From positions 8,928,001-8,992,000 of the forward strand of contig OZ004612.1 of assembly GCA_963924565.1 (NCBI GenBank): a stretch of 64,000 nucleotides of DNA, in the 5' to 3' direction. Origin of the DNA: Ascidiella aspersa. Lineage: Eukaryota. The position numbers and the translations under genes were made by a program. The notes below the pieces were generated by a model. The model was not told the DNA's origin. It ran no database searches and worked only from the letters and a program-made list of their open reading frames with translations. Position 1 is the stretch's first letter; each line of letters starts with the position of its first letter. Below, piece after piece: positions 7,201 through 61,439 of this stretch.

Positions 7201-9547
7201 CATACGTGGCCCGAATGTCACTTGACTGGCGCGAGAGGCGCGCGTGATTATGGGATGGATGACGAAATGAATTGCCGCACGTGAGGCAAATGATTGGGCT
7301 TCGGCTGCTGCACATCACTCACATTTTGAAAGGTGGCAAGCAGTGTGTCCTCTAAGCCTAAGTGCGCATTGCGCAAATGTACAGCACCACTAAACCATGT
7401 TCGCAGTAAAACAGGGAAATCTAAGCGTTTGTACATAGATTTGTCATGTGAACATTAAGATATAGGTTTGACGCCTTTGGGTTTCCTGAGGAATTATTCA
7501 GTCTCGGATTAACTGTCTTTTCAGCACATAAATAATGAAGGACGGTGTCAACTACATAATAAATATTAATTTTCATTAAAACGAAATGACAAATCCTAGT
7601 TGTAGCACGTAAAGCCTGGTAGCTTGTATGAGCAAAATATTTTACGTTACTGTTACATCACCTTAAAATCAGAAACGGGCAAATATAGTGTTTAAATTGC
7701 TCTGTTACACGTGGCCCAATTGATCGTTTTAAGCCTTGTTAACATTGCATAGGTGACGCAATTTAATCACATTGCGTAACGCTAGTTATGTAACACGATT
7801 GGCACGAAATAAAAATCGCTTGTAGGATGTTTCATTTCCAGAGTTCAAGCGTTGGATAACCATATAAACAAGTTTCAAACGTCATCTTTGTATGTTTGCC
7901 AAAACCTAAAGGTAAAGTCACACATATTTGATCAAACACGTGGCCCAATCTACCTTACGTAATCTGTCGTAAGCGTGTTGTTGTTAAACGGACGTTTACA
8001 TTGCGTCGGACATTAGATATGTTGATGAAAACCCTTGCTTCCAAACCCCAGGTGAAAACCCTTCCAGTGCACTATGCATTGCGCCACGCTGGCACATCAG
8101 GCAGAGCACGCGTCAGTTCCAGGTAACTTTGGAGTCCCAGCCCGCAGAAAAAAACGTCGCCTAACCCAGTTGGTTCCACGCTGGAAGCGATGACATGCCC
8201 TTTGTTGCGACTGCCCTGTCATGGCGCGGGCCTAGCGTGTTCAAAGAACAAGGCGTGCTCCATCCAAAACGGTCTTGTGACTCTGTCACGTGACACGCGC
8301 TCTCTCAATTCTGGTTGGTTTGGCGCGCTTTCGCTTCTCCCACTCTCTCCTACTCTTTGCTCGGAGCGCACAACTTCTCTTTGTTCTCCTGTTCGCTGCG
8401 TAGCGACACGGCCCTGGGCCAAAACAACCCGAAAACATTCCAGTTCAAGCGGCAGCAGCGTTTTTCGAAAGCCGAGTTTCGCCTAACTGCACAGCAAACA
8501 CGTTTTCGTTTTCCATTACACGAGGCATGTGTTACGTAAAAATCACTGCATTACGTCGTGGGCTGACGTGCCAGCGGAATGGCTAGTTTTGGACGAGGCC
8601 GTTCACAAGCTCTGCACAAAAATACAGGCATAAAATTCCACTATTAAAGGTCAAAGATTTGACTTGTGCTTCTCAGTTGCTGCAAAAGTTAACCCTGGGA
8701 AATTTCGCCGTTGTGTAAACAGCAACTGTGCGTTGATCGTGCTCCGTTTTTGCGGGTTTCGGCTGTCCTTATATTTTTAGCTCATTCTTGTGGCCGAAAT
8801 TAGGTTTAGCCCGAGGCAATTAGCGCGCCTGTTCAAAACGGAGTTGAAACTTCAGCGAAACTTTCCATCTCGCGGCACTAAAATTGACGTATCGGAAAGT
8901 CATTGCCGGTAGTTTCCCTTGTCTGGAAGAATTTCTCTTCTGTCTGTCATGCATATAATGTATTTAATGTATATAATATATGTAATTTAAATTTAGGTTT
9001 TCAATTTACAGTATTCTAAACCTAAAAAAGAGACAGCTGACTCGATGAACCGTACGATTCTTTCGCAGTCTCCTGGCAACATCAAATATTGCAAAACGTT
9101 TTGATTTCGTCGACTTTCCTATTGTATTTCATGTTTTAAATAAAATCATATCATGTCATACAGTCGCACAGCAGCTTTACGAGAATTTTGGGCCTGCCGA
9201 AGGTGACTGTGCAAAAATGCTCAATAGCTGGAGCACATGACCCGTTCAATTGCCCCAGTGAGAATCGGTAAACAGAATTCCTGTGGCTGTGGGTAAGCGG
9301 GTGCTGATAAATGATGACTGCGTGCTTTCCAGTTCGTCTGCGACATCCGCTATATGCGCCTCAATAAGCATATGCAGCCTCAGCACTGCTGTCTGATCAC
9401 CGATCATATACAAGGACGAACAAGGACACGCATCCAATTTGAACAGCCGAAAAAAATGTAGCGTTCGGTTTATGATGTATATTTATTTTTGCTCTCGCTA
9501 ACCTACAAACTTTAACAAAAAGTGTGTTTAACTTGCAATCAACGACC

Positions 9548-9978
9548 CAGTGTTGCAATGAATTAAATAAATGACTTGACTTGACCTTGTGTCACTCAAG
9601 TCATTGTTTTTTTTTTTGATTGGGCTTGACTTAGTCTTTTGGGCAAAAGACTAGACTTAATTTAAGTCATTTGGAAAAATGTTTTGACTTGGACAAAAGT
9701 CAAAAAAAAATCATAAAGTAGGGTAATTTTCCTAAACTTTTACACATAAATACGCCTGCTGTTTGTTTCGTTTATGGTTTTGTTTTTGATATGCAAAAAT
9801 CTTTCTGAAAAAATAAAAAAATTTAATAGTTTGTCATTTATGTTTCATTCCAATGAGAATTGACTTGGAAGTAACTTATGACTCGGAGTTGGACTTAGAC
9901 TTTTGTTGTTTTATAAAAAAATAACTGAACTTTGGAATTTTGCTCAAGTCATTCAAAAAAGGCTTGTTTACAATACTG
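9548..9978. mobile_element. MITE of the CAGTGTTG-TIR / GACTT-repeat family (probably hAT-derived)
   Basis: Starts CAGTGTTG and ends CAATACTG. Multiple subterminal GACTT(G)/AAGTC repeats. 8-bp flanks caacgacc / aaacgacc (7/8 match). Related copies occur elsewhere in the window. Confidence 0.8.
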
Positions 9979-10887
9979 AAACGACCTACGAAGTTCGCGT
10001 GCGCGCATTCAGATTTTGGCAATCCGGAAAGGAACTATACGTTTGGTAAAAATCAGTCGGAATGTGGTGAACGTTGTACCTTGCACTCTAATGTTGTCCC
10101 ACAGTCGACTCCCAATTGTGCCCAATCTATTCCAGGCTCCGTATGAATGAACCCGGGCAAACCTATCCAAACACGCCCCCGACTCAGCGAAACGTGGACT
10201 TTGATATCCCGAGCAGTTCCGAATGCAAGTCATTGAGGTTGTTTTGACGGAGCGTTTCTGTTTCATAACCAAGTCAAAAGTTGAACCCTGAGATTTTGTC
10301 AAATGTGCACTTTTTATCAACGCGTTTTAATCGTAGAAAATCGCTTTTGCGCAACCGTGTTAATGTTTGTCGGGCACGCCGAGACACGCCCGTATAGCGA
10401 CGAGTGTCATCAGCCGTTTAACGTGTACGTGTCGCTTTTTTTCAAGTGCTTTTGTGTCGAAATCAGCAACAAGACACCATTCAATCTTGTTGGGTTTTGT
10501 GGGTTTTAAATTATTCTTCTCGCTTTAAAAGCCACTTACTTCTCTTTATCAACGGTTTTTGCCAATTTATTTATTTGTATTAAGCAGATTATCTGCACAG
10601 ACTTGCGACAGCCCCAGTTGGTGACACTGCAATGCGATTGGATTTATTACTTGGTGTCCAAACAGTTCTATCTTACGCCTAAAGTAAAAATTCAACCAAG
10701 GTGACAAATAAAAAACATATGGTTGCTGATGATGTGCCCAACACTCCACTGACATAGGCCTGTCGCCCCTTTAAAACCAGCTGGCATACAATTCCTTGTT
10801 TGCAAATACATTGGTTGTTATGTGCACAGAATTATTTTTATTCGGGGAGTTTAAAAAAATATTTAGTTTAAAAATAACCGTCTAGAT

Positions 10888-11348
10888 CAGTGGTTCTCAA
10901 CCGCCGGTCCGCGGACCGGTGCCGGTCCGCGTCAACTCTTCTGCCGGTCCGCCAAATGTATTACAATATTAAATCTAAATTGCAAAACTCAAGATGTTGA
11001 AGGCTTATCCATCAAATTAAGAAGTTCGCCAGCTTCGTAATTTGCTGCATTGTCACGTAACTTATATGAGTTAGTTGAAGGTCTACTTTGAACTTCATTG
11101 TGTCGTCACAATGCTGCAAGTGTTTTGGCCAACTGTATAAAAGTAGGCTACAACTCGTTGAAGTCTTCAACTTTAAGACCAGTTGTATGTGAAAGATAAC
11201 AGTGTTTTAGTTGCAACTATTGCGTTATTAAATTTTAGGTTGATTTTTATTTTTGAAGGTCCACCGGAAAACCGCAAAACTTGTCCGTCCGCAAAACTTG
11301 TTTTGAAACTTTACCGGTCCCGTAAGCTAAAAAGGTTGAGAACCACTG
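10888..11348. mobile_element. Non-autonomous hAT (Charlie-like) MITE, 461 bp
   Basis: Perfect 15-bp TIR CAGTGGTTCTCAACC / GGTTGAGAACCACTG. Perfect 8-bp TSD gtctagat (10880-10887 and 11349-11356). CCGGTCCG subterminal repeats. Confidence 0.95.
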
Positions 11349-11469
11349 GTCTAGATTTCATTGGATAGTTTATATTTTCCAAATGTTTACCGAAACCTTG
11401 CTCGGAAGAGTTTTTTGCTATACCTTCAGGTTTTTTGGGAATGCTGCCTTTGTTTTATGCTTGTTTTGT

Positions 11470-13064
11470 TTTATTATTAATTCTATACGTTTCAACTGTT
11501 CTAGTTAACGGCAACGTTTTTTTATTGTATGTTTTGCCTAATCCTAATTTTTTTGCCTAATCCTAATTTCTGTCTATTTAACTGTTTAAATGTGTTGCAA
11601 TGAAACCTACTCCTAGAAAGTTTGAAAACTGACGTCACGAAACAGACCAAGCCAACTTTCCGGTTTTGAATTTCTATTCGATAAAAACGCCATGTGAATA
11701 AATCGGTATACGCCGTGATTTCAACTTTAGAAAGAAAAATTGGCAAAGAAAATACAAACAAGACTTTGGCAAAACGGAAAGTAAAAGCACGAAATAGTTT
11801 GGCACGAACTGACACCAATGGGGCGTCGTACCATAAAAGGAAATTATTCCGATCAACACCCGGAATAAGTTAAACACAACAAAAATATGAATCACACCCG
11901 AAGCGATAAACGGCATCTCGGTGAAACGTTTTGCTATTTTTGCCATGGCTCGAGGCTGTAACTGTTCCTCGGGTGCTTTTTCATCGGAACCACGAGTGAC
12001 GTAGCAGCACGAAGATGACGTCACGCATGGCTTGGAGTCAATCTGGAAATGAGGCAAGGCATGTTTAAAGCACAATATGCAAATGCGACACATTTCCAAT
12101 AAGAAAGATCTTAGCGGGAACGTTTTAAGCAAAACCAGTTGCAGTCGTAAAGTCTTAACGGTTATTAAGCGAAATAAAATTACAACGGGCAATAAACTTA
12201 CAATAAATTCGACTCCGGTTGCTCTTCTTCTTTTGCGTTGTACCACACAAAGAGTTTATTTGAAGGCGGGAGAAACAGCATTCGATACACACAATAGTCG
12301 AAACTGCTGATGTAGCTTTCGAGGTGCTTGAGCTTGCTTGTTTTTCGGTTTTCAAACGTGGCTGTCGAAGTCCTCTCATCAAAATCAATGAATCCCTGAG
12401 GCCTCGCAGCTCACAAACAGTCTTTCAATATCAAGCTCAGCTTTCTCCAGTCGCTCTTGCGTTTCAAGAGTCTTTGAATAAAACTAGCGGACGCGCCGAG
12501 AGGCTGATGCAGTTTTGCTTTGGTAGATTTTTTTTCATAGAAACAAAAATTTTCTCTTTTCTTTTTTGTTTTTTCGTCTATGAAGCTTGTGTTTTTTTTT
12601 CTGCGCATCAGTCCCCTTGCAAACGCTCGTGCTTAATAGCATTCCCTGCGTTCGCTCGAGGAACCGGACCCGGAACAGTTCTCGGGCCAGTCTCCGACAC
12701 AATCCTGCTAGCAGAGTTTGTCGGCGTAGCCTTTAAGCCGCTACTAGGCATCAGCATTGTTCTGTATTGTTTCTGAATAGCACACGATGAAATCCGACGG
12801 ATACAGCTTGTCGTTGTCGGCGCGACGAAATACGGTCCAAAAAAGTTGCTTGCAAATCTGCTTTTCCTTTTGCCACCAATGCAAGGCGAGTCGATTTTCG
12901 CGATTCCAGACCGCCGGTCCAGAATCATTGCCAGTGGGGGCCCATGATGAGGCAGTAGACAAGAAAAAACACAACTTTTTTTAAAAGAGTTTTTCAAAAA
13001 GAAGCTGTACAAAGCTAGACACACAAAACGGCACTCTGTACAGTTCGACGTTCGCAGCTAGAAT
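11470..13064 (-). ncRNA. Predicted Pol II transcript without a recognisable long ORF (lncRNA or small-ORF mRNA), possibly 2 exons (13064-12202 and 12042-~11500)
   Basis: Core promoter at 13064-13154. Donor ATT|GTAAGT at 12201 and acceptor CTCATTTCCAG| at 12043. U-rich 3' part. AATAAA on the - strand at ~11521-11526 and ~11470, with an internal one at 12255-12260. Inferred only; no expression data. Confidence 0.45.
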
Positions 13065-13154
13065 GAGGTGACGCAACCGTGCGAAGCTTTTATACGAGCC
13101 GGTCGCGACAGCAAAATGGTCACGAGGGCGCTCTCCTTATAAGGCGACCACGTG
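13061..13154 (-). promoter_or_regulatory. TATA/Inr core promoter with CArG (SRF) box and E-box
   Basis: On the - strand, TATAAAAG (13087-13094) starts exactly 30 nt upstream of the A in the Inr-like TCATTCT (+1 = 13064). Perfect CArG CCTTATAAGG at 13135-13144. CACGTG at 13149-13154. TGACGCAA (ATF/C-EBP-like) at 13069-13076. Lies in a CpG-rich island. Confidence 0.65.
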
Positions 13155-16090
13155 ACAAGCGCGCGAAGTTTCTCGCGATTGCGCAAGATCCGGCGAAGCG
13201 CGCTGAGCGAACGACGACGCGACGTCGCCTGGTTTGTTTGTGGGCGCGCTGGGGGCGTCCGCGGGCGTGCCCAAACACACCACAGGCACATTCCTAGCGA
13301 TCCTAGGTTGGCCGAGGGGCGTCGCTAAGCTGGGGCAGGTGTTTTTTCAGCCTTGTTCCATTTCGAAACACGCCTCGGTCGCCTCGTGTTTAGATTGGGT
13401 TACGAAGTTGCGAAATGCATCGAGCCGAATCGCGCTTTGGAACATGTTTGTCCAACACGTGGTCGAGCTAATGGTTTTGTTCTGCCTAGTTAATACTTTG
13501 AAATGAACAAACTGGTCAAAATATGACGGTAAACGTTTTTCAGGAGCTATCCTACATGGTAAGATCAGGAAGTTATTTTAAAAACAAGGGCCCCACTATA
13601 AAATGGCTAAGAAAATCTATTATTTCTTGTTTTTTCGTTTGTATACTGAAATATATTGTAATTTGATGACTAAAATCAGGGTTTTTTATGATCATTTATG
13701 TTGTTTAAAGAAGCCATCCCACCTGGTAACATCAAGTAGTTGTTTTAAAACAAGCGTTCTATGTATTATTGGATGTGAAAATCTATTATTTCTTGTTGTT
13801 TCGTTTGGATACTTATATCCAGTAATTTAATGACTATAATCAATGCTTTTTGTTCAAATTATGATACTATGGAACTTTTACGCCGTTTGGACACAGTACC
13901 GTAACCACAGATGTGTCTCGACTGGACGTCGGTGTTTAGTGGGTTGAATAGACGTTTAATGATGTACACTTGTAGTAACACTTTGATTAGGTTAAATATA
14001 CCGCGCACCACTGCGCAGTGAAATATGACATCAGTTTAAGAGCATATACTTGGAATTTTTCTTCTGCGCGTAAAGAATTCCTGCTTCATAAACTTATGAG
14101 TTAGGGACAGAGAATGATGACAAGATTACAAATTTGTATTAATTGCCTTTACTATAACTATTACACATGCCACCGGAGCCCAAACGTTGTTTAATGAACA
14201 AGACAAAATAACGGAATTCAAATAAACTCAGTACCAACATCATCTACTGTAGAATAGCTTAATAGTATACATTTAACATAGCTTAAAAGAGCCGTTTTAA
14301 CAAGCAGTTATTAAAACTATTGGATATAGCCGTTGATTTGTACCAACATAAAAGGCCTTTTGATAATTCGAAAGAACGCAGTAACTTTTTGCCGAATATG
14401 GCTATCATACGTCACTGCTTACACCCTTGCTGTACAACGTTACAGTTTCTCCATGCTGTACGAAATGGCATCGTTAGGAGTTTACACAAAATCGTGTCGT
14501 ATTTCCTCGAGATAATGAGGTGAATTACCAGTTCTACGGGGCGCGTGTGATGCCTATTACGTCAAGAATCCCATCGCCTGACGAATTCCAAGCGGTGACC
14601 AGCTTTCTCCGGCGACCCCGGCTAGCTTTCGAGACTCGTCATTTCGAAACACGCCTCTGATTGTTACGTCACAGAAATTCCCCGCGTTCGCCCGACTGGC
14701 TTCGGACTCGGCTGGTCTCGGGGCATATTGGCGTATGCATGCCAGCGCCGATCCGTAGCCGTTCAGGAATGTCAGTCACGAGTTTGCGTCAAAAGTTGAC
14801 TCACACTGCAGTAGCAGGTGATCGGGACAGATTTGATAGGGACGATTTTCTGGGGATTGAATAGTCTTTTGTACGAGACCTGGACAACTAGAGTTTTATC
14901 AGTTATTTTAAATTAGATTGGATTTTTAAAATAAAGCATTTTTTTAATTGGATTATAATATAAATTACAGAAATCGTAAAACTAGCAGTTAAACTAGAAT
15001 GTGGTTTAATCAACCCACAATCATTTTTGATATAATCGCATTTGTTCTCATAGGAATGTTGGAGTCAAAGGTTTAGAAACTTTTCAGGCTGTAAAAATTA
15101 ATAAATCTAACTACTTATTTCAATATTTGTAAAAGTGGCATTTTAGGTTCAAGTATAAATTAGATTAAAACTGAATTAGGGCACACAAACTTTTCACAAA
15201 TTAGATTAAAATTAGCAGAATATCGCTATAATTTGTTGAAATATCCAACGAGAATTATTTAGTTGTCCAAGTCTATGTTTTCTACATCCCTGATTGACGG
15301 CTATGGAAGGAAAATAAAACGATTCCCAACGCGATGTTTTTGTCGTATTTTTAACCGAACATTTCGACAGTGCTGGGTAAATTTACAAAAAAAGGTTAAG
15401 ACCCTGAAAGCGTCCCACCACCCATATTTACCAAGTCCGGAAGTGCGACAAAAGCCAAACAGAAAACCAACAGGACGCCTTAAAATAGGTTTACGATAAT
15501 TGGTGATTTCGTCGGCAAACAGATGACCGTCGAATACGGTACGTGGAGTGGGCCACTAAGATATCCGGTTAACTGTTTGGAAACGTGCACAAAGAAATTA
15601 TGTGTTTCTAGTGACGTACGCAAAGACCCATGTGTCCGTATGTCCTTCATTAATATTTAACCGACGAGCCCCCCTTTAGGTTTACGACGGATTATGCTTT
15701 ACTCTGCTTCAAGCTATCAATGGAATCGTTGTCGGAAAGTTTTTTTTTTTAAATCCGAGTTTTAAAGACTTGCGCATTAATTCCGTCTATTTTAGTATGC
15801 CTAACGAATCTGTTTGTGCACATGGCATTCTAGTTGCCATGGTAAGTCGATCATCTCATGAAATTCACAAATAAATACTTTTGCAATCAAAGCACCAATG
15901 TCTCCACATATTATCATCTAAGCCCCTTGCTATAGTCAAAACATTTTCAATCTCTTATGTCAACAAGATAGAAGGCAACATCGTTGAATTACACAGCTCC
16001 AATATAACGTAGCCATGTGTTCCCGTGTCGAATAGATCTTTATTTTTAAGCATAATGGCTGGCAGTTGTATTTATGACGTATAGTAAGGT

Positions 16091-32947: not shown

Positions 32948-35399
32948 CTCCAAAACGCAAAATTACCCCCCTTGAAACTTAACGTTTACCGACATCGTAA
33001 GTACAATCGGTCGGGTGACAATTAAGCCTAGAAAGCCACGCGTTACGCTTGTAATCCTACCGCGTGGGCAAGTGTAATTTTCTCGAGTTCGGCTCGGACA
33101 TTATGTTCTGTCTTTTGTCGCTGCTCCAGCAAAACCGCAAGGCTAATCCGCAACTGGCATTATAAGCGTTGTAAAACACAAAACCTGTTTACGTAGAAAG
33201 CAAGGCGGAGCCGTTATTAAGGCCGCTTAATGGGGCGGTAATTTCAGGGAGACATCGATCATTGAGCTGCAATTAGTTTCTGCTAAACGCCGACGTTCAG
33301 GTTAAGTCTTTGCAGAGCGGCGATGACTTAGCATCGAATTTACACGCGCATCCGGTTCAAAGAGGTGGACTTTTAAAACTAAAAGATTTAACCATTTGTG
33401 ATGAACCTATGTTGCAAAGGACTTAATTCAAAATTCTTAAGAGCTGCTACGTAAATAAATTCGCTCTACCCGAGGTTTTTTTTATTTTTTTTACCTTTGT
33501 TTACATTTTGCAATATACAGAAACTGGTAAGAATCCAATTCAGCACACATTTAACGCGATATACTTGGTCGTTTTGATTTGTTCACTTGGAAAGAAATAT
33601 ATACGAAAGCGCTATAGGCCAGCAACGTGGCTGACCCATTTTCCGAAATTAGTTATCTTATGGACGCAAACCAGCACCAATTTCTCACGAAACTCTCAAT
33701 TGCGTTGCGTAAATAGCTTTCCTTGGCGAACGCCAAGTTGAAAACGGCAACAGGGCGCGCTGTACATTTCCCACCGTGTCTACACAGTACACACGTGCAA
33801 GGGCCTCTGCCTTTCACGCAAGGTGCCGTGTAGCGTGTGACGTGAAGCTTGCGCCAAATTGCGCCGCAGAGCGCTTTCCCAGGCAAGCAACGACGTCTCC
33901 CATTTCCGGTAGGTACAAGCCTCCCAGCAACTTTGCAGCCGTCCAGCACCTGCAACTCTATAGCAACTGGCTCTCGCCGGGCGAAATGGCTTGAATGCAG
34001 CAGGTCGATTCGAGTACATTGTTTCCTTGCCGGTTTATTTGCTGAGCAAATTACAAGACCCAATTGACTTATCTGAAGGGCTTGAACTGCTGGTAACGCA
34101 TCCACGCCTAACATTTTAAAAATCCGTGTGAGTTGTATGCAATGAGTCCTGCAGCACTTTTCATAGAGATACTTCAACCAACATGGTAATCATGTCTTTG
34201 TTTTAGTTATAATACTGCTGAATCAGAGTTAACGCGTTGAGACTAGCCATTTCACCTTCTGTGAGAAGGCTTTTTTGTTGGTGTAAAATGTAACCAAGAA
34301 AAGAGCCCAGTTGGTGTTTAAACTCATCATCTTTCAACAACGAGCTACAGTTTGCTCGCTATATGTAACGGTTTGTTGTTTGCAAATCCAAATATCGCTT
34401 TTAATGATATTTTACCTGGAACCAAATTTCTTGGCTAGGACTTGGTTTATTCCAAAATGAGTTTGTACAAACTGCCTAAAAAATCGTTGCCCTTAATGCC
34501 AATCCATTTCCTTGCGCGAAGCAGAATCGTATCGTGGACTAAAGCATTGCTGTAAGGTTTGTGGCCAGGCGCAAATGGAATTGAAGGCGAAATATTTCAG
34601 AAAGCATGCACGGCATTTTACGGCTTACATGTTAAACTATGGCAATCAGGGGTATTAACAAGGACTGCGAAATTATTTTTTGAAAAATGATATAATAATG
34701 AAATTATGGGTGATTCCGGAAATCAGAAACTCGTCGCAACAACGTCATGCGTCATCGGCCTACGTCACTCGCGCTTACTGTCGGAAACTTGGGTGACGCA
34801 TATTTTTTGCAGTTGGTAACTTTCGAAAAGATCGAAAAACAGATAAGGCGGACTTGGGCAACTCGCCCAGCTGCAACTTTGACCCTCGAAACGTGATCAA
34901 ACCACTGGAATACCCCGACCCGGCTTTCCTCAAGCGCCTTGACATTTGCACGCGAAAACACCATCGATTTCCTGCACTCCAAAGGCCGGGTAGAAAGAAG
35001 AACGCTCGTTGGGCCGTTTCCTGATTTCGCCGCTGCGACGCACGGCCGATTTGCTCTGGCGTCACTCTGCGTCTTGACGTCACGTGGTGCTGCCGCAATA
35101 TCGCGGGTCGAGAACTGCGTAACTGTTGGCACCTGGTCGAACGCCGTGGGATTTGGACCAATCCGAGGTTGGATTTTTCGCTGGGAAATATTTATTTAAG
35201 GCTGCTTAAAGGTTGTGCGTTAAGCGGTGTATATGTCCAACCATTTAATCTCACGTTTTTGTTCAGTTTGCAATATTCTCACCCTTGTAGTTCCGGGTAC
35301 GGTAGAGACAACCTCCAGGATGCCCGAAAACTGTACAGAATTTGCCAGTGTTAGTGAATTTAGTCAATAACTTTACGTTAGTATACTTAAGGCACGGTT

Positions 35400-54362: not shown

Positions 54363-54895
54363 CTATAAGTGGATCGGTGAATATCCACCTTAATTTAGTC
54401 ACGTAAATTGGTTAAATACAGGCTGTAGAGTCGTCTAAAGCTTTGGTAGTAAGAAACGCATAGATAATAACTTAACTCCCTATCATGATGACCTACGGGT
54501 TGTTTTGATAATGGCATTGTCTTTACAGACAGTTTAATATGATTTCAATTGTAAAACAATTTTATTGTAACTATATGAGGCAAAAGTACATAATTTATAC
54601 CAGGCGAACAATAAACGAAATTATACATTTGTCAAGCAATCGGGGGTTTATCCTGCTTTTCTTGCATTGTTGTTTGAAACGTTTGTTTGGTATATTTTTT
54701 CGTCTATAGTTGCAATAATATTGCCATGTAGAATATTGCCCGAATAGGTGGTCGACACGTTAGAAGCCTACATAATAACATTTGCCGGAAAACAGTTTTA
54801 CAATTGAAACAATGCCTGACAGCAACAGTGCGTGTTCGTTTAAACGGATTTGCTTAGAATCCTAATATGCTGTAAATGCAAACGTTTCTTTTCAG

Positions 54896-55349
54896 CTCGG
54901 TCACAGACAGTCTGAGCAACGGCATTATCATGACAATGGCCGATTGTGATTTCATAAAGCGCTGGGTGCAGGCGTACCGAAAGCTGAACACCAAGAACTT
55001 TCTCACCTGGGGCATCAAGGTGCCCTTCGAGCTCTACAAGGAAGACGGCGGTGTTAACGTTCACGTTGAGCAGTACACAATCAACCGGCCCAACCCGTAC
55101 ATCGACAGCAAGTTCTCAACCACCAGCGACAACTACAACCTGTCCGAAAATTTCTTTCTGCACATTCACCCCTACTACCATGGTAAGCTGCAAGCCGAGC
55201 ATGTGCTCAATGCCCGCGAAGAGCAGTTGCGCACCATGGACAACACGTACGGCGCCGCGGCACGGGTGGCCCTCTTTGGCTCCGAGGACCTCGTCTTTCT
55301 CACCGGCGAGACACCGTTTAAAAGAAAGCGGTCAAAACTCGTAACGTGA
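54896..55349 (+). CDS. Glycosyltransferase coding exon 5 (final); total ~382 aa, GT32 / alpha-1,4-glycosyltransferase-like
   Basis: Acceptor TTTTCAG|. NGIIM..FIKRW..Y..W pattern of this family. TGA stop. Phase matches exon 4. Confidence 0.88.
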
Positions 55350-58732: not shown

Positions 58733-60999
58733 GCTCGCTCAATTGGTTCTGTGTTGCTTTGGAAACACATCAACAAGCCAGGAATTAACCATTTTAACGT
58801 CTTCACTCTGGATCTGAACGAAGAACTGGTGGCATTTTACGGTGGGACCCTCCAAGCTCAAACAGAATTCCTCAGGCACTGCATAGAGAAGATCTTATCC
58901 TTGTACAAAACAACTGAAAACAAACCGAAGTCTGTTGCAATTGTTGGTCATTCCATGGGTGGAATTCTTTCAAAGGGAGTTTTCACGCTTAACGGTTTCG
59001 ACCCAACCAAAGTGAGCACCATTGTAATGCTAGCAACCCCAAACTTATCCCCGGTCTTGAGTGTGGACTCGCTCATAGCCGGTTACTACGAGAGGGTAAA
59101 CTCCTTCTGGCGTAAAAATGCCCAACAGCTGCAAGACGTCAACATTGTATCAGTTGGTGGCGGCCCGAGAGACTACCAGGTGCCAACCGCCTTGACCAGG
59201 CTCCCCCTTAATAGCAGCTCCAATACGTTTTCCACCATCGCCACCACAGTACCGAGGGTACATGTCTCGACCGAACACCAGACCATAGTCTGGTGCAACC
59301 AGCTTGTGCTTGTCACTGCCCGATTTTTTATTGACCTCCTGTCGCAAGACACTAAGCAAATCACTACCGACGTGGCGCAGCGCACTAGGGTTATGGATTT
59401 CCATTTCAGGCGGAACCCTGGTTTTGATGTTGTCCCCAAAAGCGACAAGCCGAAACTAGTGCGTCTATCAAAGTCCCATGCCTGGAACGAGGTGCACAAC
59501 GATCGCTGGTCGATGAACAAGCTCGAAGCGGGGCCTGGTACATACTTTAGCTTTTCGATTGACCGCTTCTTGGAGCAGATTTCGTCCCATTTTGTCGCTC
59601 GCACTGACAGCCCTAAGGAAAAATGGATCCTGGCCTGTTCCGTCGACGAAACCGGCGCCTGTCAGCAGGCCACCGACCTTTCGGCTCAAGGCACTTTGAC
59701 CGACAAATACAAGATCATCCACCTGGACTTGGTCGAAATGAAAGAGCGCGGATTTACCCACGTGCTTTTTCCAATGACCAAGAACTCCAAAGCAAACATC
59801 CTGGACGTTAACGTTTTATCTGACGGCGAGTTAAGCGCAAGCGTTACGGTACCGCATGTTTTCTCGAACCTATGGACTTACAACAAGGGCGCAAGCCACA
59901 CGCTAGAGTCTGGCGGCTCGGTTGAGGACAGGTTCTACTACCGCGTAACGCTGGAAGGGTTTCAGAACATCTATCAGTCGTTTAAGATCTCGATGGCCGA
60001 TTCAGGCGCCAACCAGCTGCTCAAAATGGAGGTGCCTTGGGATGAAGGCCAGACCATCTACGGATCCGGCAGCATTTTGGCCGGCCTATACAGCGGCCCC
60101 ACCGACTTGAAACAATCGGCAGTGCTGCATGTTTACGCAGACGCGGGTGACCATAAACCGCCGCGCTTTAACCTCAAAGTCGACTTCTTTCAAGTTCTTG
60201 GCAGCCTGGTTCGCTTTTTTGGCGTGTCATTGCCCGTCTACGTTGTCTGCAACATTTTGCTTACCTACTTTTACATGGTCAACCAGATGCAGCTCGCCAA
60301 GCCTTGTCACTCTATCTGGGACGCGCACAACCTTACCGCCAAGCCCTACAAGATTCAACCCTTCATCAGCCTCTTTAAGTATTTTTATACCACTTTTGCA
60401 CTGTTCTCTTCGGGCTGGACGGTTGCCGGGCTTCCCCTGCCCGACTCTATCACGATGGAAAACGAAAACCAGACGTGGTTCACATTCGCGCCCCTCGTTC
60501 TTTTCCTTTTTGCGTTTGAGCTCTTCTCTGTGACCAGGATCATCCAGCGCCTTATCATGGTCATCATTACCCCGCTTTTGCTGCGACTCTCAACCCTAGC
60601 TCCCTTCGCGCTGCTCACAGATTCGGCGACGGCGCGCTTCGTTCTCCACTCCGTTGTGCTCGCCGCCGCAGCCCAGCAGTTCAGCTCGCTAGCCTTCCTC
60701 TATATCGCCGCCGTTTCATTCTGTAACGTCTGCCTGCTGCGCAAAACCGCGCTTGACAACCCGGCGCCGCCTCCGCCGCCTTTGGACGTCCAAAAGCCCG
60801 CGGAAGGCGGCGAGGACGAATCGGCCTCCAAAGAGGAAAGCAGCGAGGCCGCCCCGAACCTTTCACCCGCCAAGAAGGAGCCGGATCCCACTTCGCCCGA
60901 GGACGACACCTTCTCGGTCAACTACCTTGTGCTGCAGATGTGGATTTGGCTGGCTCTCTTCTCGCTGCCCTCTCTCGTCGTGCTGCTCGTCAACTTTAG
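58733..60999 (+). CDS. PGAP1: PGAP1 exon 3 (2267 nt): alpha/beta-hydrolase domain, luminal domain and TM helices
   Basis: Begins ARSIGS. Lipase motif GHSMGG at 58946-58963. GGPRDYQVP and STEHQTIVWCNQL motifs. Donor AG|GTTTGT, phase 2. Confidence 0.95.
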
Positions 61000-61439
61000 G
61001 TTTGTGTGGATTTTCGTGTTTAGTTTAAGCATTTAAACACTCAACAAAAACAAAAACTGACAACGATTGCGTTTCAACGGTGCTGGTCATATGCTTGTCG
61101 GCCAACGACAATCTACACTACATTGCTTTTAAAGAACAGACAACATTATATCGACTAAATATAAGCAACGATTTGCACAAATTTTTGTTATTAAATTTAT
61201 AATTTTAATTTTGCTACAAACTTTAACACATTTCGGTTTTTTGAAGTGCACCACCCAATTTCTCATTTTCAACGTTTGAAAAAACTGGCACGCAGTTAAA
61301 CTAGGTTTTACTAATTTATTTTATTGCCCGATAACTAACTTTAAAGTTAACTATCGCGGGCCGGATATTAAATTTTGTATCGAGTTTTAACAACTTGATT
61401 ATCGTCGTTAAACGAAGGAGATCCAAATAGCTATTTTAA

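What the first reader, a model, noticed from the sequence alone, without database searches (positions are those of the whole stretch)
11470..13154. Hidden - strand Pol II unit with an immediate-early-type promoter and no recognisable protein
Seen: TATAAAAG exactly 30 nt before a TCATTCT Inr, a perfect CArG box and a CACGTG just upstream, a strong GTAAGT..TTTCCAG intron (12043-12201), a second CArG (CCATAAAAGG, 11831-11840), two perfect CREs (11630, 12016) and a U-rich 3' region with AATAAA. Known: TATA plus proximal CArG/CRE is the architecture of SRF/CREB-inducible immediate-early and muscle genes. Inference: this is the gene served by the surrounding ~35 kb of coding-free, island-rich DNA, and it is a lncRNA or small-peptide mRNA.
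Basis: partly seen in the sequence, partly recalled or inferred. Interest (0 to 1): 0.75.

Follow-up and report, generated by a model that had tools for sequence, protein, structure and literature searches.

The report
Expressed spliced orphan RNA gene, probably non-coding

Summary
RNA reads confirm the transcription unit. In run X5, depth is 9-12 from 11700 to 13099 on one strand only, and zero from 13100 upward, which fits a start about 30 nt after the TATA box. The 12042/12202 junction (GT..AG on the minus strand) is read by 9 reads. A marine metatranscriptome contig from a second study shows the same junction. About half the molecules keep the intron. Coverage ends near 11.69 kb, so the AATAAA signals at 11470-11526 are not reached. 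The unit is single copy. Its two long frames (106 and 90 codons) match no family, homologue, paralogue or solved structure. Their codon usage looks like that of non-coding control frames. No Rfam family matches, and folding is only mildly better than shuffles. The "immediate-early" reading is not supported. Both CREs lie downstream of the start, and the CArG-to-TATA spacing occurs genome-wide no more often than a control pattern. The claim that the unit is served by 35 kb of surrounding DNA could not be tested. The scan noted this same stretch once before (s1-802494), not on other DNA. Verdict: a real, ordinary new lncRNA-type gene.

The parts
13149..13154 (.). CACGTG E-box, -85 to -90 from the inferred start
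   Evidence: The motif is present; binding was not tested.
13135..13144 (.). Proximal CArG-type box CCTTATAAGG, -71 to -80
   Evidence: Present; function not tested. The CArG-to-TATA arrangement is not enriched genome-wide.
13087..13094 (-). TATA box TATAAAAG; its first T is 30 nt upstream of the Inr A
   Evidence: In Ciona intestinalis TATA boxes lie preferentially at -32 to -29 (passages of PMC4691747).
13060..13066 (-). Initiator-like TCATTCT; inferred start at A 13064
   Evidence: RNA depth is 9.96 in bin 12900-13099 and 0 in 13100-13299. This has bin resolution only; no start-site mapping was available.
12202..13064 (-). Exon 1 (863 nt if the start is at 13064)
   Evidence: depth is 9-10 on one strand, with a dip to 3.16 in the A-rich bin 12500-12699.
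12925..12945 (-). First AUG and a 6-codon upstream frame; its TGA stop overlaps the next ATG (ATGA)
   Evidence: context atcATGg. Translation was not tested.
12608..12928 (-). 106-codon frame (stop included), the 5'-proximal long ORF
   Evidence: Searches found no relatives. Codon score is -0.116, and 14 of 59 non-coding controls score at least as high. It is invariant in the two DNA runs.
12043..12201 (-). 159-nt GT..AG intron, removed in about half of the molecules
   Evidence: the 12042/12202 joint is read by 9 X5 reads and 1 X1 contig. Unspliced depth inside the intron is 8 (at 12142-12145).
11690..12042 (-). Exon 2; the 3' end is approximate (about 11.69 kb)
   Evidence: depth is 12.3 and 12.0 down to 11700, then 0.28 in 11500-11699. 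No AATAAA lies within 11640-11800; the only variant found is AATAGA at 11678-11673.
11674..11946 (-). 90-codon hydrophobic frame (stop included) in U-rich exon 2, preceded by 11 upstream AUGs
   Evidence: 40% T, context gccATGg. No relatives. Codon score is -0.159, and 22 of 59 controls score at least as high. Its stop lies at or beyond the apparent RNA end.
12016..12023 (.). TGACGTCA inside exon 2, part of a predicted hairpin
11831..11840 (.). Second CArG-type box, inside exon 2 and the 90-codon frame
11630..11637 (.). TGACGTCA about 55 nt beyond the apparent 3' end; it may not belong to the unit

Best explanation
This is a real, single-copy RNA polymerase II gene on the minus strand of a probable tunicate genome.

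Shown: RNA covers about 13064 down to about 11690 on one strand only. The 159-nt intron 12201-12043 is removed in about half of the molecules and kept in the rest.

Inferred: a TATA box at -30 and an initiator-like TCATTCT set the start near 13064. The spliced product would be about 1.2 kb (863 nt plus about 353 nt, added arithmetically; the exons were never joined).

Inferred: the RNA is a lineage-restricted long non-coding RNA, not an mRNA.
- Its frames have no relatives and have non-coding-like codon usage.
- If the 5'-proximal 106-codon frame were the coding sequence, the spliced junction would lie about 400 nt downstream of its stop. That layout is expected to trigger nonsense-mediated decay.
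- The 90-codon frame follows 11 upstream AUGs.

Inferred, weakly: because the promoter has a TATA box, expression is probably tissue- or condition-restricted, as shown for TATA promoters in Ciona. The RNA, or the act of transcribing it, most likely acts locally on neighbouring chromatin within an RNA-gene-rich, protein-poor domain. No experiment here bears on that function.
For: Transcription, strand and splicing:
- X5 raw RNA reads give depth 12, 12.3, 10.3, 9.77, 3.16, 9.33 and 9.96 in the seven bins from 11700 to 13099. All have the first mate on +.
- Depth is 0 in all bins from 13100 to 15299 and 0.28 in 11500-11699.
- The joint 12042/12202 reads CT..AC on the plus strand, which is GT..AG on the minus strand. 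It is seen in 9 reads with 9 different starts.
- It is also seen in one 269-nt contig of the metatranscriptome X1, which comes from another study.

Other evidence:
- The unit is single copy: 1 match in G000.
- The start matches TATA/Inr geometry. In Ciona intestinalis, TATA boxes lie at -32 to -29, CA and TA are frequent start dinucleotides, and TATA promoters show higher expression specificity (abstract and passages of PMC4691747).
- Pfam gives nothing for either frame.
- The word search gives 0 hits for the 90-codon frame and 0 for the 106-codon frame.
- The exhaustive HMMER search gives 0 of 1.84 billion representatives at E<=0.001 for the 106-codon frame.
- There are 0 PDB matches at E<=1 for either frame and only self-hits in the own genome. 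Two metagenome scans found nothing.
- Codon log-likelihood per codon is -0.116, -0.159 and -0.228 for the three frames. The 59 control frames average -0.205, and held-out coding sequence scores +0.12 to +0.26.
- Natural 1-nt indels at 12528 and 12591 frameshift the 65-codon frame.
- There are 9 AUGs in exon 1 and 2 more before the 90-codon frame.
Against: - Two ATG frames of at least 90 codons on one strand within about 1.4 kb exceed the background rate. There are 14 in about 108 kb of strand in window 1-54000, two of them here, against a simulated 8.98 +/- 2.54.
- The 90-codon frame has a strong start context (gccATGg) and two hydrophobic stretches.
- The 106-codon frame shows no difference in the two other individuals. 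X2 has 4 differences in 11327-13285, none inside the frame. X3 has 0 in 12499-12982.
- Absence of relatives cannot exclude a young lineage-specific protein.
- The codon test rests on a single reference ORF.
- Only one RNA library of unknown tissue was read, and only about 6 in 100 of it.
- Cap, poly(A) tail and the exact ends were not seen.
- The depth dip at 12500-12699 means continuity of the 5' and 3' halves is not proven read by read.
- No related eukaryotic genome could be searched, so conservation is unknown.
- The proposed local (cis) function is pure inference.
Confidence: 0.6

Rival explanations
1. It is the mRNA of an orphan small protein. One candidate is the 106-residue basic product, reached by leaky scanning or by re-initiation after the 6-codon upstream frame whose stop overlaps its ATG. 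The other is the 90-residue hydrophobic product of exon 2.
For: Both frames exist on the expressed strand. Their start contexts are adequate to strong. Frames of this length are denser here than the background rate. The 106-codon frame is invariant in two other individuals.
Against: No family, homologue, paralogue or solved structure was found. Codon usage is indistinguishable from non-coding control frames. An intron about 400 nt downstream of the 106-codon stop would make the spliced form a decay target (established knowledge of EJC-dependent NMD). The 90-codon frame has 11 upstream AUGs, 40% T that by itself yields Phe/Leu/Ile-rich frames, a common Cys45Arg variant, and a stop at or beyond the apparent RNA end.
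Confidence: 0.2
2. These are two exons of a larger gene whose other exons lie outside the 6-kb stretch that was read, possibly a conventional coding gene.
For: Exon 2 ends without a canonical AATAAA. Only 9300-15299 was laid. In table 7, 110 loose-end rows were not shown.
Against: At a depth of about 12, a splice leaving the stretch should give about as many loose-ended reads as the known intron gave joints (9). It would then rank among the best-supported rows shown, which include rows with only 3 reads. No such row is listed near 11700 or 13064-13099. Depth is 0 in all bins from 13100 to 15299. Low two-strand signal at 10700-11499 lies in a high-copy MITE. No Pfam domain was found among the six other long ORFs tested before 58 kb; one had only a sub-threshold match.
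Confidence: 0.08
3. It is functionally inert transcription: a chance TATA/Inr, or an enhancer-associated promoter, producing an unstable by-product RNA.
For: The TATA-Inr pattern alone arises by chance in 11 of 60 simulated windows. Half of the molecules are unspliced. Folding is only mildly better than shuffles, with z -1.74 and -1.62.
Against: The boundaries are sharp, one strand only is covered, and the canonical intron is used in two independent studies. About 90 read-equivalents were seen in 7.8 million records (my arithmetic). Few differences are seen in two other individuals across the promoter and transcript: 4 plus 1 gap in 1,959 nt in X2, against 17 in 918 nt just upstream. Other flanks are as low, however, so this is weak.
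Confidence: 0.07

Closest known systems
Intergenic long non-coding RNAs of tunicates. A Styela plicata genome annotation lists 2,451 lncRNAs (passages of PMC12627437). Many unannotated intergenic promoters were reported in Ciona intestinalis (passages of PMC4691747).
   Same: It is a Pol II-type promoter, a few hundred to about 1,200 nt of RNA, has one intron that is spliced inefficiently, has no conserved frame, and lies in protein-poor DNA.
   Different: No orthologue or annotation could be looked up, because the organism is coded and no tunicate genome collection was available. Whether it is already annotated somewhere is therefore unknown.
SRF/CREB-driven immediate-early gene promoters such as c-fos and egr-1 (recalled, not looked up here)
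   Same: A TATA box with a CArG-type box within 100 nt upstream; perfect TGACGTCA octamers nearby.
   Different: The octamers are at about +1,040 and about +1,430 from the start, not in the proximal promoter. No Ets-type site flanks the CArG box (by eye). The CArG-to-TATA arrangement is at control frequency genome-wide. Inducibility was not tested.
Yellow crescent (YC) RNA of Styela eggs, a maternal RNA of about 1.2 kb regarded as non-coding, whose 5' part is complementary to the PCNA mRNA 3' UTR (recalled from Swalla and Jeffery; papers not seen here)
   Same: An ascidian-type genome, about 1.2 kb when spliced, and no convincing frame.
   Different: PCNA lies on another contig (C7). The unit shares no significant similarity or complementarity with that locus: the best hit is 18 nt at E 0.02, and there is only a self-match genome-wide. 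It is not filed as YC RNA.
The neighbouring five-gene cluster of structured short-ORF RNAs, 4.6 kb before the window
   Same: It is also a TATA-driven, expressed RNA gene without a recognisable protein, and it lies in the same ~100-kb domain.
   Different: There is no sequence similarity to the 50 kb that hold the cluster: the best hit is 38 nt at E 0.013 in a T-rich tract. No TATA-Inr pattern of this type occurs there. This unit is spliced and about 1.2 kb long. The cluster units are described in that unchecked note as mostly unspliced and about 0.8 kb.

Membership tests
Long non-coding RNA (operational class) | Transcript longer than 200 nt made by RNA polymerase II | tested here: met
   About 1.37 kb is covered on one strand, and a GT..AG intron is spliced. 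TATA/Inr lie at the 5' boundary. Cap and poly(A) were not seen.
Long non-coding RNA (operational class) | No conserved or family-assignable open reading frame | tested here: met
   Caveats: the 90-codon frame was not put through the exhaustive search, and no sister-species genomes were available.
Long non-coding RNA (operational class) | Not translated | not testable with these tools
   This needs ribosome profiling or proteomics.
Known RNA families (Rfam 15) | Match to a covariance model | tested here: not met
   0 matches at gathering score in the window. 0 matches at E<=1 in 11400-13300.
SRF/CREB immediate-early gene | Rapid, protein-synthesis-independent induction | not testable with these tools
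   Only one RNA run, of unknown condition, was available.
SRF/CREB immediate-early gene | CRE in the proximal promoter | tested here: not met
   TGACGTCA is at 12023-12016 (in exon 2) and 11637-11630 (beyond the RNA end). There is none between 13065 and 13400.
SRF/CREB immediate-early gene | Serum response element: a CArG box with a flanking Ets (GGAA/T) site (definition recalled) | tested here: inconclusive
   The CArG box is present at 13144-13135. By eye, no GGAA/GGAT or its complement lies within about 20 nt. Not every SRF target needs the Ets site. CArG-N35-45-TATAAAAG occurs 47 times genome-wide against 65 for the control.
Ascidian YC RNA | Complementarity of the 5' region to the PCNA mRNA 3' UTR (recalled) | tested here: not met
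Neighbouring short-ORF RNA gene family (s1-790847) | Shared conserved core sequence | tested here: not met
   Sensitive blastn of the unit against the 50 kb upstream gave no hit better than 38 nt at E 0.013.

The most novel reading that the evidence does not exclude
The unit is a stimulus- or tissue-gated, taxon-restricted regulatory RNA. Its compact promoter carries an E-box, a CArG box, a perfect C/EBP-type palindrome and a heat-shock-like GAAnnTTC, all within 130 nt of a TATA box. Under this reading it makes an early-response lncRNA in a tunicate, one member of a ~100-kb chromosomal domain devoted to RNA genes. Alternatively, it is a newly born microprotein gene that uses an ATGA stop-start overlap to re-initiate on the 106-codon frame.
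Probability: 0.1. Interest if true: 0.55.

Novelty: new member of a known kind. Interest (0 to 1): 0.3.

Why it matters
The finding shows that a reader working from sequence alone correctly predicted a start region, a strand and an exact intron for a gene with no coding signal. It adds one verified RNA gene to a protein-poor region of a probable tunicate genome that already holds a cluster of unusual RNA genes. For biology at large it is modest: lineage-specific lncRNAs are numerous, and the function of this one is unknown. It would become interesting if expression proved inducible or muscle-specific, if the locus were conserved among ascidians, or if one of the frames were translated.

Tried and rejected
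1. A known small membrane protein for the 90-codon frame. Rejected: no match in Pfam, the word search, PDB or the own genome.

2. A known protein for the 106-codon frame. Rejected: all found nothing.

3. A sixth member of the neighbouring RNA-gene cluster. Rejected.

4. YC RNA of ascidian eggs. Rejected by the recalled PCNA-antisense criterion.

5. A snoRNA, miRNA or other Rfam host. No support.

6. A strongly structured RNA. The z-scores are only -1.74 (20 shuffles) and -1.62 (100 shuffles).

7. A regulon defined by CArG-to-TATA spacing. The genome-wide count is at control level, and 17 of the 47 hits belong to one promoter family. That family is upstream of frames with a short Gly-X-Y stretch; the Pfam Collagen match is only 16.5 bits, below the cut-off, and no lectin domain was found.

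8. Naming the organism through an exact look-up of its PCNA. The sequence is not in the collection. The Styela plicata assembly is 419.2 Mb against 308.6 Mb here, so the size does not fit that assembly. A Glyco_hydro_6 exon match of 28.1 bits (cut-off 27) fits a tunicate cellulose synthase (the link to tunicates is recalled).

9. Finding transcript contigs or relatives in JGI metagenomes. None found.

10. Literature. The first search was swamped by 'cargo' matching 'carg'. A search for 'ascidian' plus 'lncRNA' gave no paper on a gene like this among the 10 listed of 80. The review PMC7816648 mentions ascidians only in its reference list. Supplements of PMC4691747 and PMC12627437 were not opened. 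Their promoter lists or lncRNA annotations could bear on whether similar units are already catalogued.
Full report
WHAT IS IN THE SEQUENCE.
- CACGTG at 13154-13149 and CCTTATAAGG at 13144-13135.
- TATAAAAG at 13094-13087.
- TCATTCT at 13066-13060. Its A at 13064 is 30 nt after the first T of the TATA box.
- A 159-nt intron, 12201-12043, starting GTAAGT and ending TTTCCAG.
- A second CArG-type box at 11840-11831.
- TGACGTCA at 12023-12016 and 11637-11630.
- AATAAA at 11526-11521 and 11475-11470.

MOTIF STATISTICS. Taken singly, the motifs are unremarkable.
- CArG: 9 in the window against 4.83 expected; 8 of 100 shuffles reach 9.
- TATAAAAG: 6 against 4.96.
- A relaxed TATA-N20-26-Inr pattern occurs once in the window on both strands. 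It arises in 11 of 60 simulated windows, with a mean of 0.23.
- TGACGTCA (8 against 0.83) and CACGTG (23 against 12.14) are over-represented. TGACGTCA is similarly dense in other DNA of this genome, with 3 in the 50 kb upstream and 9 in 91.7 kb of 30 other loci. It is a genome trait, not a mark of this unit.
- CpG observed/expected averages 1.14 over the whole window. 'Islands' here are G+C-rich patches, not CpG islands. The 500-nt bin 13001-13500 has 56% G+C.

RNA EVIDENCE. One search for sequencing runs gave five runs: a 2026 RNA run of the same coded organism (X5, raw reads), a marine metatranscriptome (X1), and three runs of unrecorded kind. I laid four of the five on 9300-15299; X4 was left out.
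- X2 and X3 cover all 30 bins at flat depths near 53 and 100, so they are genomic DNA.
- X5 gives depth 12.0, 12.3, 10.3, 9.77, 3.16, 9.33 and 9.96 in the seven 200-nt bins from 11700 to 13099. Every read pair has the first mate on the plus strand.
- X5 depth is 0 in all eleven bins from 13100 to 15299 and 0.28 in 11500-11699.
- The joint 12042/12202 skips 159 nt and reads CT..AC on the plus strand, which is GT..AG on the minus strand. It is seen in 9 X5 reads with 9 different starts.
- The same joint is in one 269-nt X1 contig (11954-12042 joined to 12202-12381). Two studies therefore show the spliced form.
- The splice-site orientation fixes the RNA strand as minus, independently of library chemistry.
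- Inside the intron, X5 depth is 8 (at 12142-12145). Three of those 8 reads carry an allele also present in the X3 DNA. About half of the molecules are therefore unspliced.
- The 5' boundary falls in bin 12900-13099, consistent with the TATA-directed start at 13064. It has bin resolution only.
- The 3' boundary is near 11.69 kb. No AATAAA lies in 11640-11800; the only variant hexamer found is AATAGA at 11678-11673.
- The low signal on both strands at 10700-11499 belongs to a high-copy element (see NOTICED IN PASSING).
- About 90 read-equivalents lie on the unit among 7.79 million records read (my arithmetic), about 6 in 100 of the run.

COPY NUMBER AND NEIGHBOURS. The stretch is single copy in the 308.6-Mb assembly. 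Earlier notes of this scan describe a cluster of five expressed short-ORF RNA genes ending 4.6 kb before the window, and call the genome a probable sea squirt (s1-790847, s1-790830; unchecked notes).
- I fetched the 50 kb upstream. Sensitive blastn gave no hit better than 38 nt at E 0.013 in a T-rich tract. No TATA-Inr pattern of this type occurs there. This unit is not a member of that family.
- A Glyco_hydro_6 exon match of 28.1 bits (cut-off 27) elsewhere in the genome fits a tunicate cellulose synthase. The tunicate link is recalled knowledge.
- In the window, the only clear protein gene among the long ORFs tested is a PGAP1-type GPI inositol-deacylase exon at 58751-61033 (PF07819, E 4.9e-56).
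- The four long ORFs tested between 5 and 46 kb had no Pfam match. One at 54876-55346 had only a sub-threshold match (C5-epim_C, 16.6 bits against a cut-off of 23.3).

CODING POTENTIAL. Exon by exon, the first AUG (12945, context atcATGg) opens a 6-codon frame. Its TGA overlaps the next ATG (12928), which opens a 106-codon frame ending at 12608. Exon 1 holds 9 AUGs. Exon 2 has two more before the 90-codon frame 11946-11674 (context gccATGg).
- Neither long frame matches Pfam, the word-indexed protein search, solved structures at E<=1, or anything else in its own genome.
- The 106-codon frame has 0 hits at E<=0.001 among 1.84 billion representatives and no relative in metagenome contigs.
- A codon log-likelihood trained on the one long coding ORF of the window gives -0.116 (106 codons), -0.159 (90 codons) and -0.228 (a 65-codon frame). 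The mean of 59 non-coding control frames is -0.205; 14, 22 and 37 of the 59 score at least as high. Held-out coding pieces score +0.12 to +0.26. The reference is a single gene, so this test is weak.
- The 90-codon frame is 40% T, which alone gives Phe/Leu/Ile/Val-rich 'membrane-like' frames.
- That frame carries a common Cys45Arg variant: 4 of 12 RNA reads and both DNA runs. Its stop lies at or just beyond the apparent RNA end.
- The 65-codon frame is frameshifted by natural 1-nt indels at 12528 and 12591.
- If the 106-codon frame were the coding sequence, the intron would sit about 400 nt downstream of its stop. That arrangement is expected to provoke nonsense-mediated decay (established knowledge).

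Against the non-coding reading:
- Two ATG frames of at least 90 codons in 1.4 kb of one strand exceed the background: 14 in window 1-54000 on both strands, against a simulated 8.98 +/- 2.54.
- The 106-codon frame shows no difference in X2 or X3.
- A young lineage-specific protein would also lack relatives.

RNA FEATURES. No Rfam family matches, either at gathering score in the whole window or at E<=1 in 11400-13300. Exon 1 folds with z -1.74 (20 shuffles; 1 folds as well). Exon 2 folds with z -1.62 (100 shuffles; 4 fold as well). The exon 2 TGACGTCA lies in a predicted hairpin. Nothing suggests a strongly structured RNA.

THE PROMOTER READING. In Ciona intestinalis, TATA boxes sit at -32 to -29, CA and TA are the frequent start dinucleotides, and CpG islands are absent. 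TATA-containing promoters (15.6% of non-ribosomal-protein promoters) show higher expression specificity than TATA-less ones, and many unannotated intergenic promoters may make non-coding RNAs (abstract and passages of PMC4691747). The unit fits that picture.

The 'immediate-early' label does not hold up:
- Both CREs are downstream of the start.
- No Ets-type site flanks the CArG box (by eye; the definition is recalled).
- CArG-N35-45-TATAAAAG occurs 47 times in the genome, against 65 for the reversed control pattern.
- Of those 47, 17 belong to one promoter family: 16 tandem copies on C3:33.40-34.13 Mb and one look-alike on C8. The three copies I inspected lie upstream of frames with a short Gly-X-Y stretch.

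Diversity does not single out the unit. It is low across promoter and transcript (X2: 4 differences plus 1 gap in 1,959 nt). It is higher just upstream (17 in 918 nt). Other flanks are as low.

COMPARISON WITH KNOWN THINGS. The nearest class is the ordinary intergenic lncRNA. One ascidian annotation lists 2,451 of them (passages of PMC12627437). I considered the maternal YC RNA of Styela (recalled: about 1.2 kb, non-coding, 5' part complementary to the PCNA 3' UTR). PCNA is on contig C7, and the unit has no meaningful match to that locus. I do not file it there.

VERDICT.
- The 3' end needs correcting to about 11.69 kb.
- The immediate-early label is unsupported.
- The claim that 35 kb of surrounding DNA serves this gene is untested.
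- My best reading is a lineage-restricted lncRNA with regulated, TATA-dependent expression (about 0.6).
- The rivals are an orphan small-protein mRNA (0.2), part of a larger gene (0.08) and inert transcription (0.07).
- It is a new member of a known kind, of modest interest.

LIMITS. One RNA library of unknown tissue was read, and only about 6 in 100 of it. Ends are known at 200-nt bin resolution only. No eukaryotic relatives could be searched. The exhaustive search was run on one frame only. Paper supplements were not opened. The organism's name was coded and not established.

Noticed in passing
window 10881-11355: A 475-nt MITE-like element with 22-nt terminal inverted repeats (95% complementary) lies just downstream of the unit. 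The first look found at least 1,384 candidate copies in the genome; 40 were scored, at 78-90% identity. DNA-run depth rises about 200-fold there, and low RNA signal is seen on both strands.
   Followed up: partly
window, whole; L002-L006; L011-L040: The palindromes TGACGTCA (8 against 0.83 expected) and CACGTG (23 against 12.14) are strongly over-represented relative to dinucleotide shuffles. TGACGTCA is similarly dense in other loci of this genome (3 in 50 kb, 9 in 91.7 kb), so this looks like a genome-wide trait. At 35075-35086 the two motifs overlap (TGACGTCA at 35075-35082, CACGTG at 35081-35086).
   Followed up: partly
window 13165-13186 (minus strand): By eye, the G+C-rich 130 nt upstream of the TATA box also hold a perfect TTGCGCAA palindrome (13186-13179, C/EBP/PAR-bZIP type) and GAAACTTC (13172-13165, two units of a heat-shock-element-like nGAAnnTTCn). 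The motif names are recalled, and nothing was tested.
   Followed up: no
G000:C3:33.40-34.13 Mb (L021-L036) and C8:4070937: Sixteen tandem copies of a conserved promoter, a CArG-like box placed exactly 35 nt before TATAAAAG, plus one look-alike on C8. In the three copies inspected, the downstream frames start with a signal-peptide-like stretch and a short Gly-X-Y run. The Pfam Collagen match is 16.5 bits, below the cut-off, and the larger downstream frame has no Pfam match.
   Followed up: partly
L013 (G000:C1:20050732) and L016 (G000:C2:1457634): Two loci share a conserved promoter: the same upstream ...caataagaytatca, then CCTTATAAGGATACG, and TATAAAAGTTTGCTG after it. No open frame longer than 85 codons lies in the next 1.5 kb. 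They may be another pair of non-coding RNA genes.
   Followed up: no
window 58751-61033 (+): A 761-codon open frame carries PGAP1-like alpha/beta and beta-sandwich domains (GPI inositol-deacylase). It is the only clear protein-coding exon found among the long ORFs of the window.
   Followed up: partly
window 11532-11569: A perfect tandem duplication of a 19-nt unit lies just beyond the RNA's apparent 3' end. In one DNA run (X3), depth drops to 78.4 in 11500-11699 against about 100 in neighbouring bins, and no long X3 contig piece is listed between 10740 and 11667. That hints at a structural polymorphism there, which could also blur the mapped 3' end.
   Followed up: no
L009 (G000:C7:174069-174857): PCNA is encoded by a single uninterrupted 262-codon frame (no intron). 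That exact protein is not in the 15-billion-sequence collection.
   Followed up: partly
window 12945-12925: The first AUG of the transcript opens a 6-codon frame. Its UGA stop overlaps the AUG of the 106-codon frame (AUGA), a stop-start overlap of the kind used for re-initiation. It may be chance.
   Followed up: no
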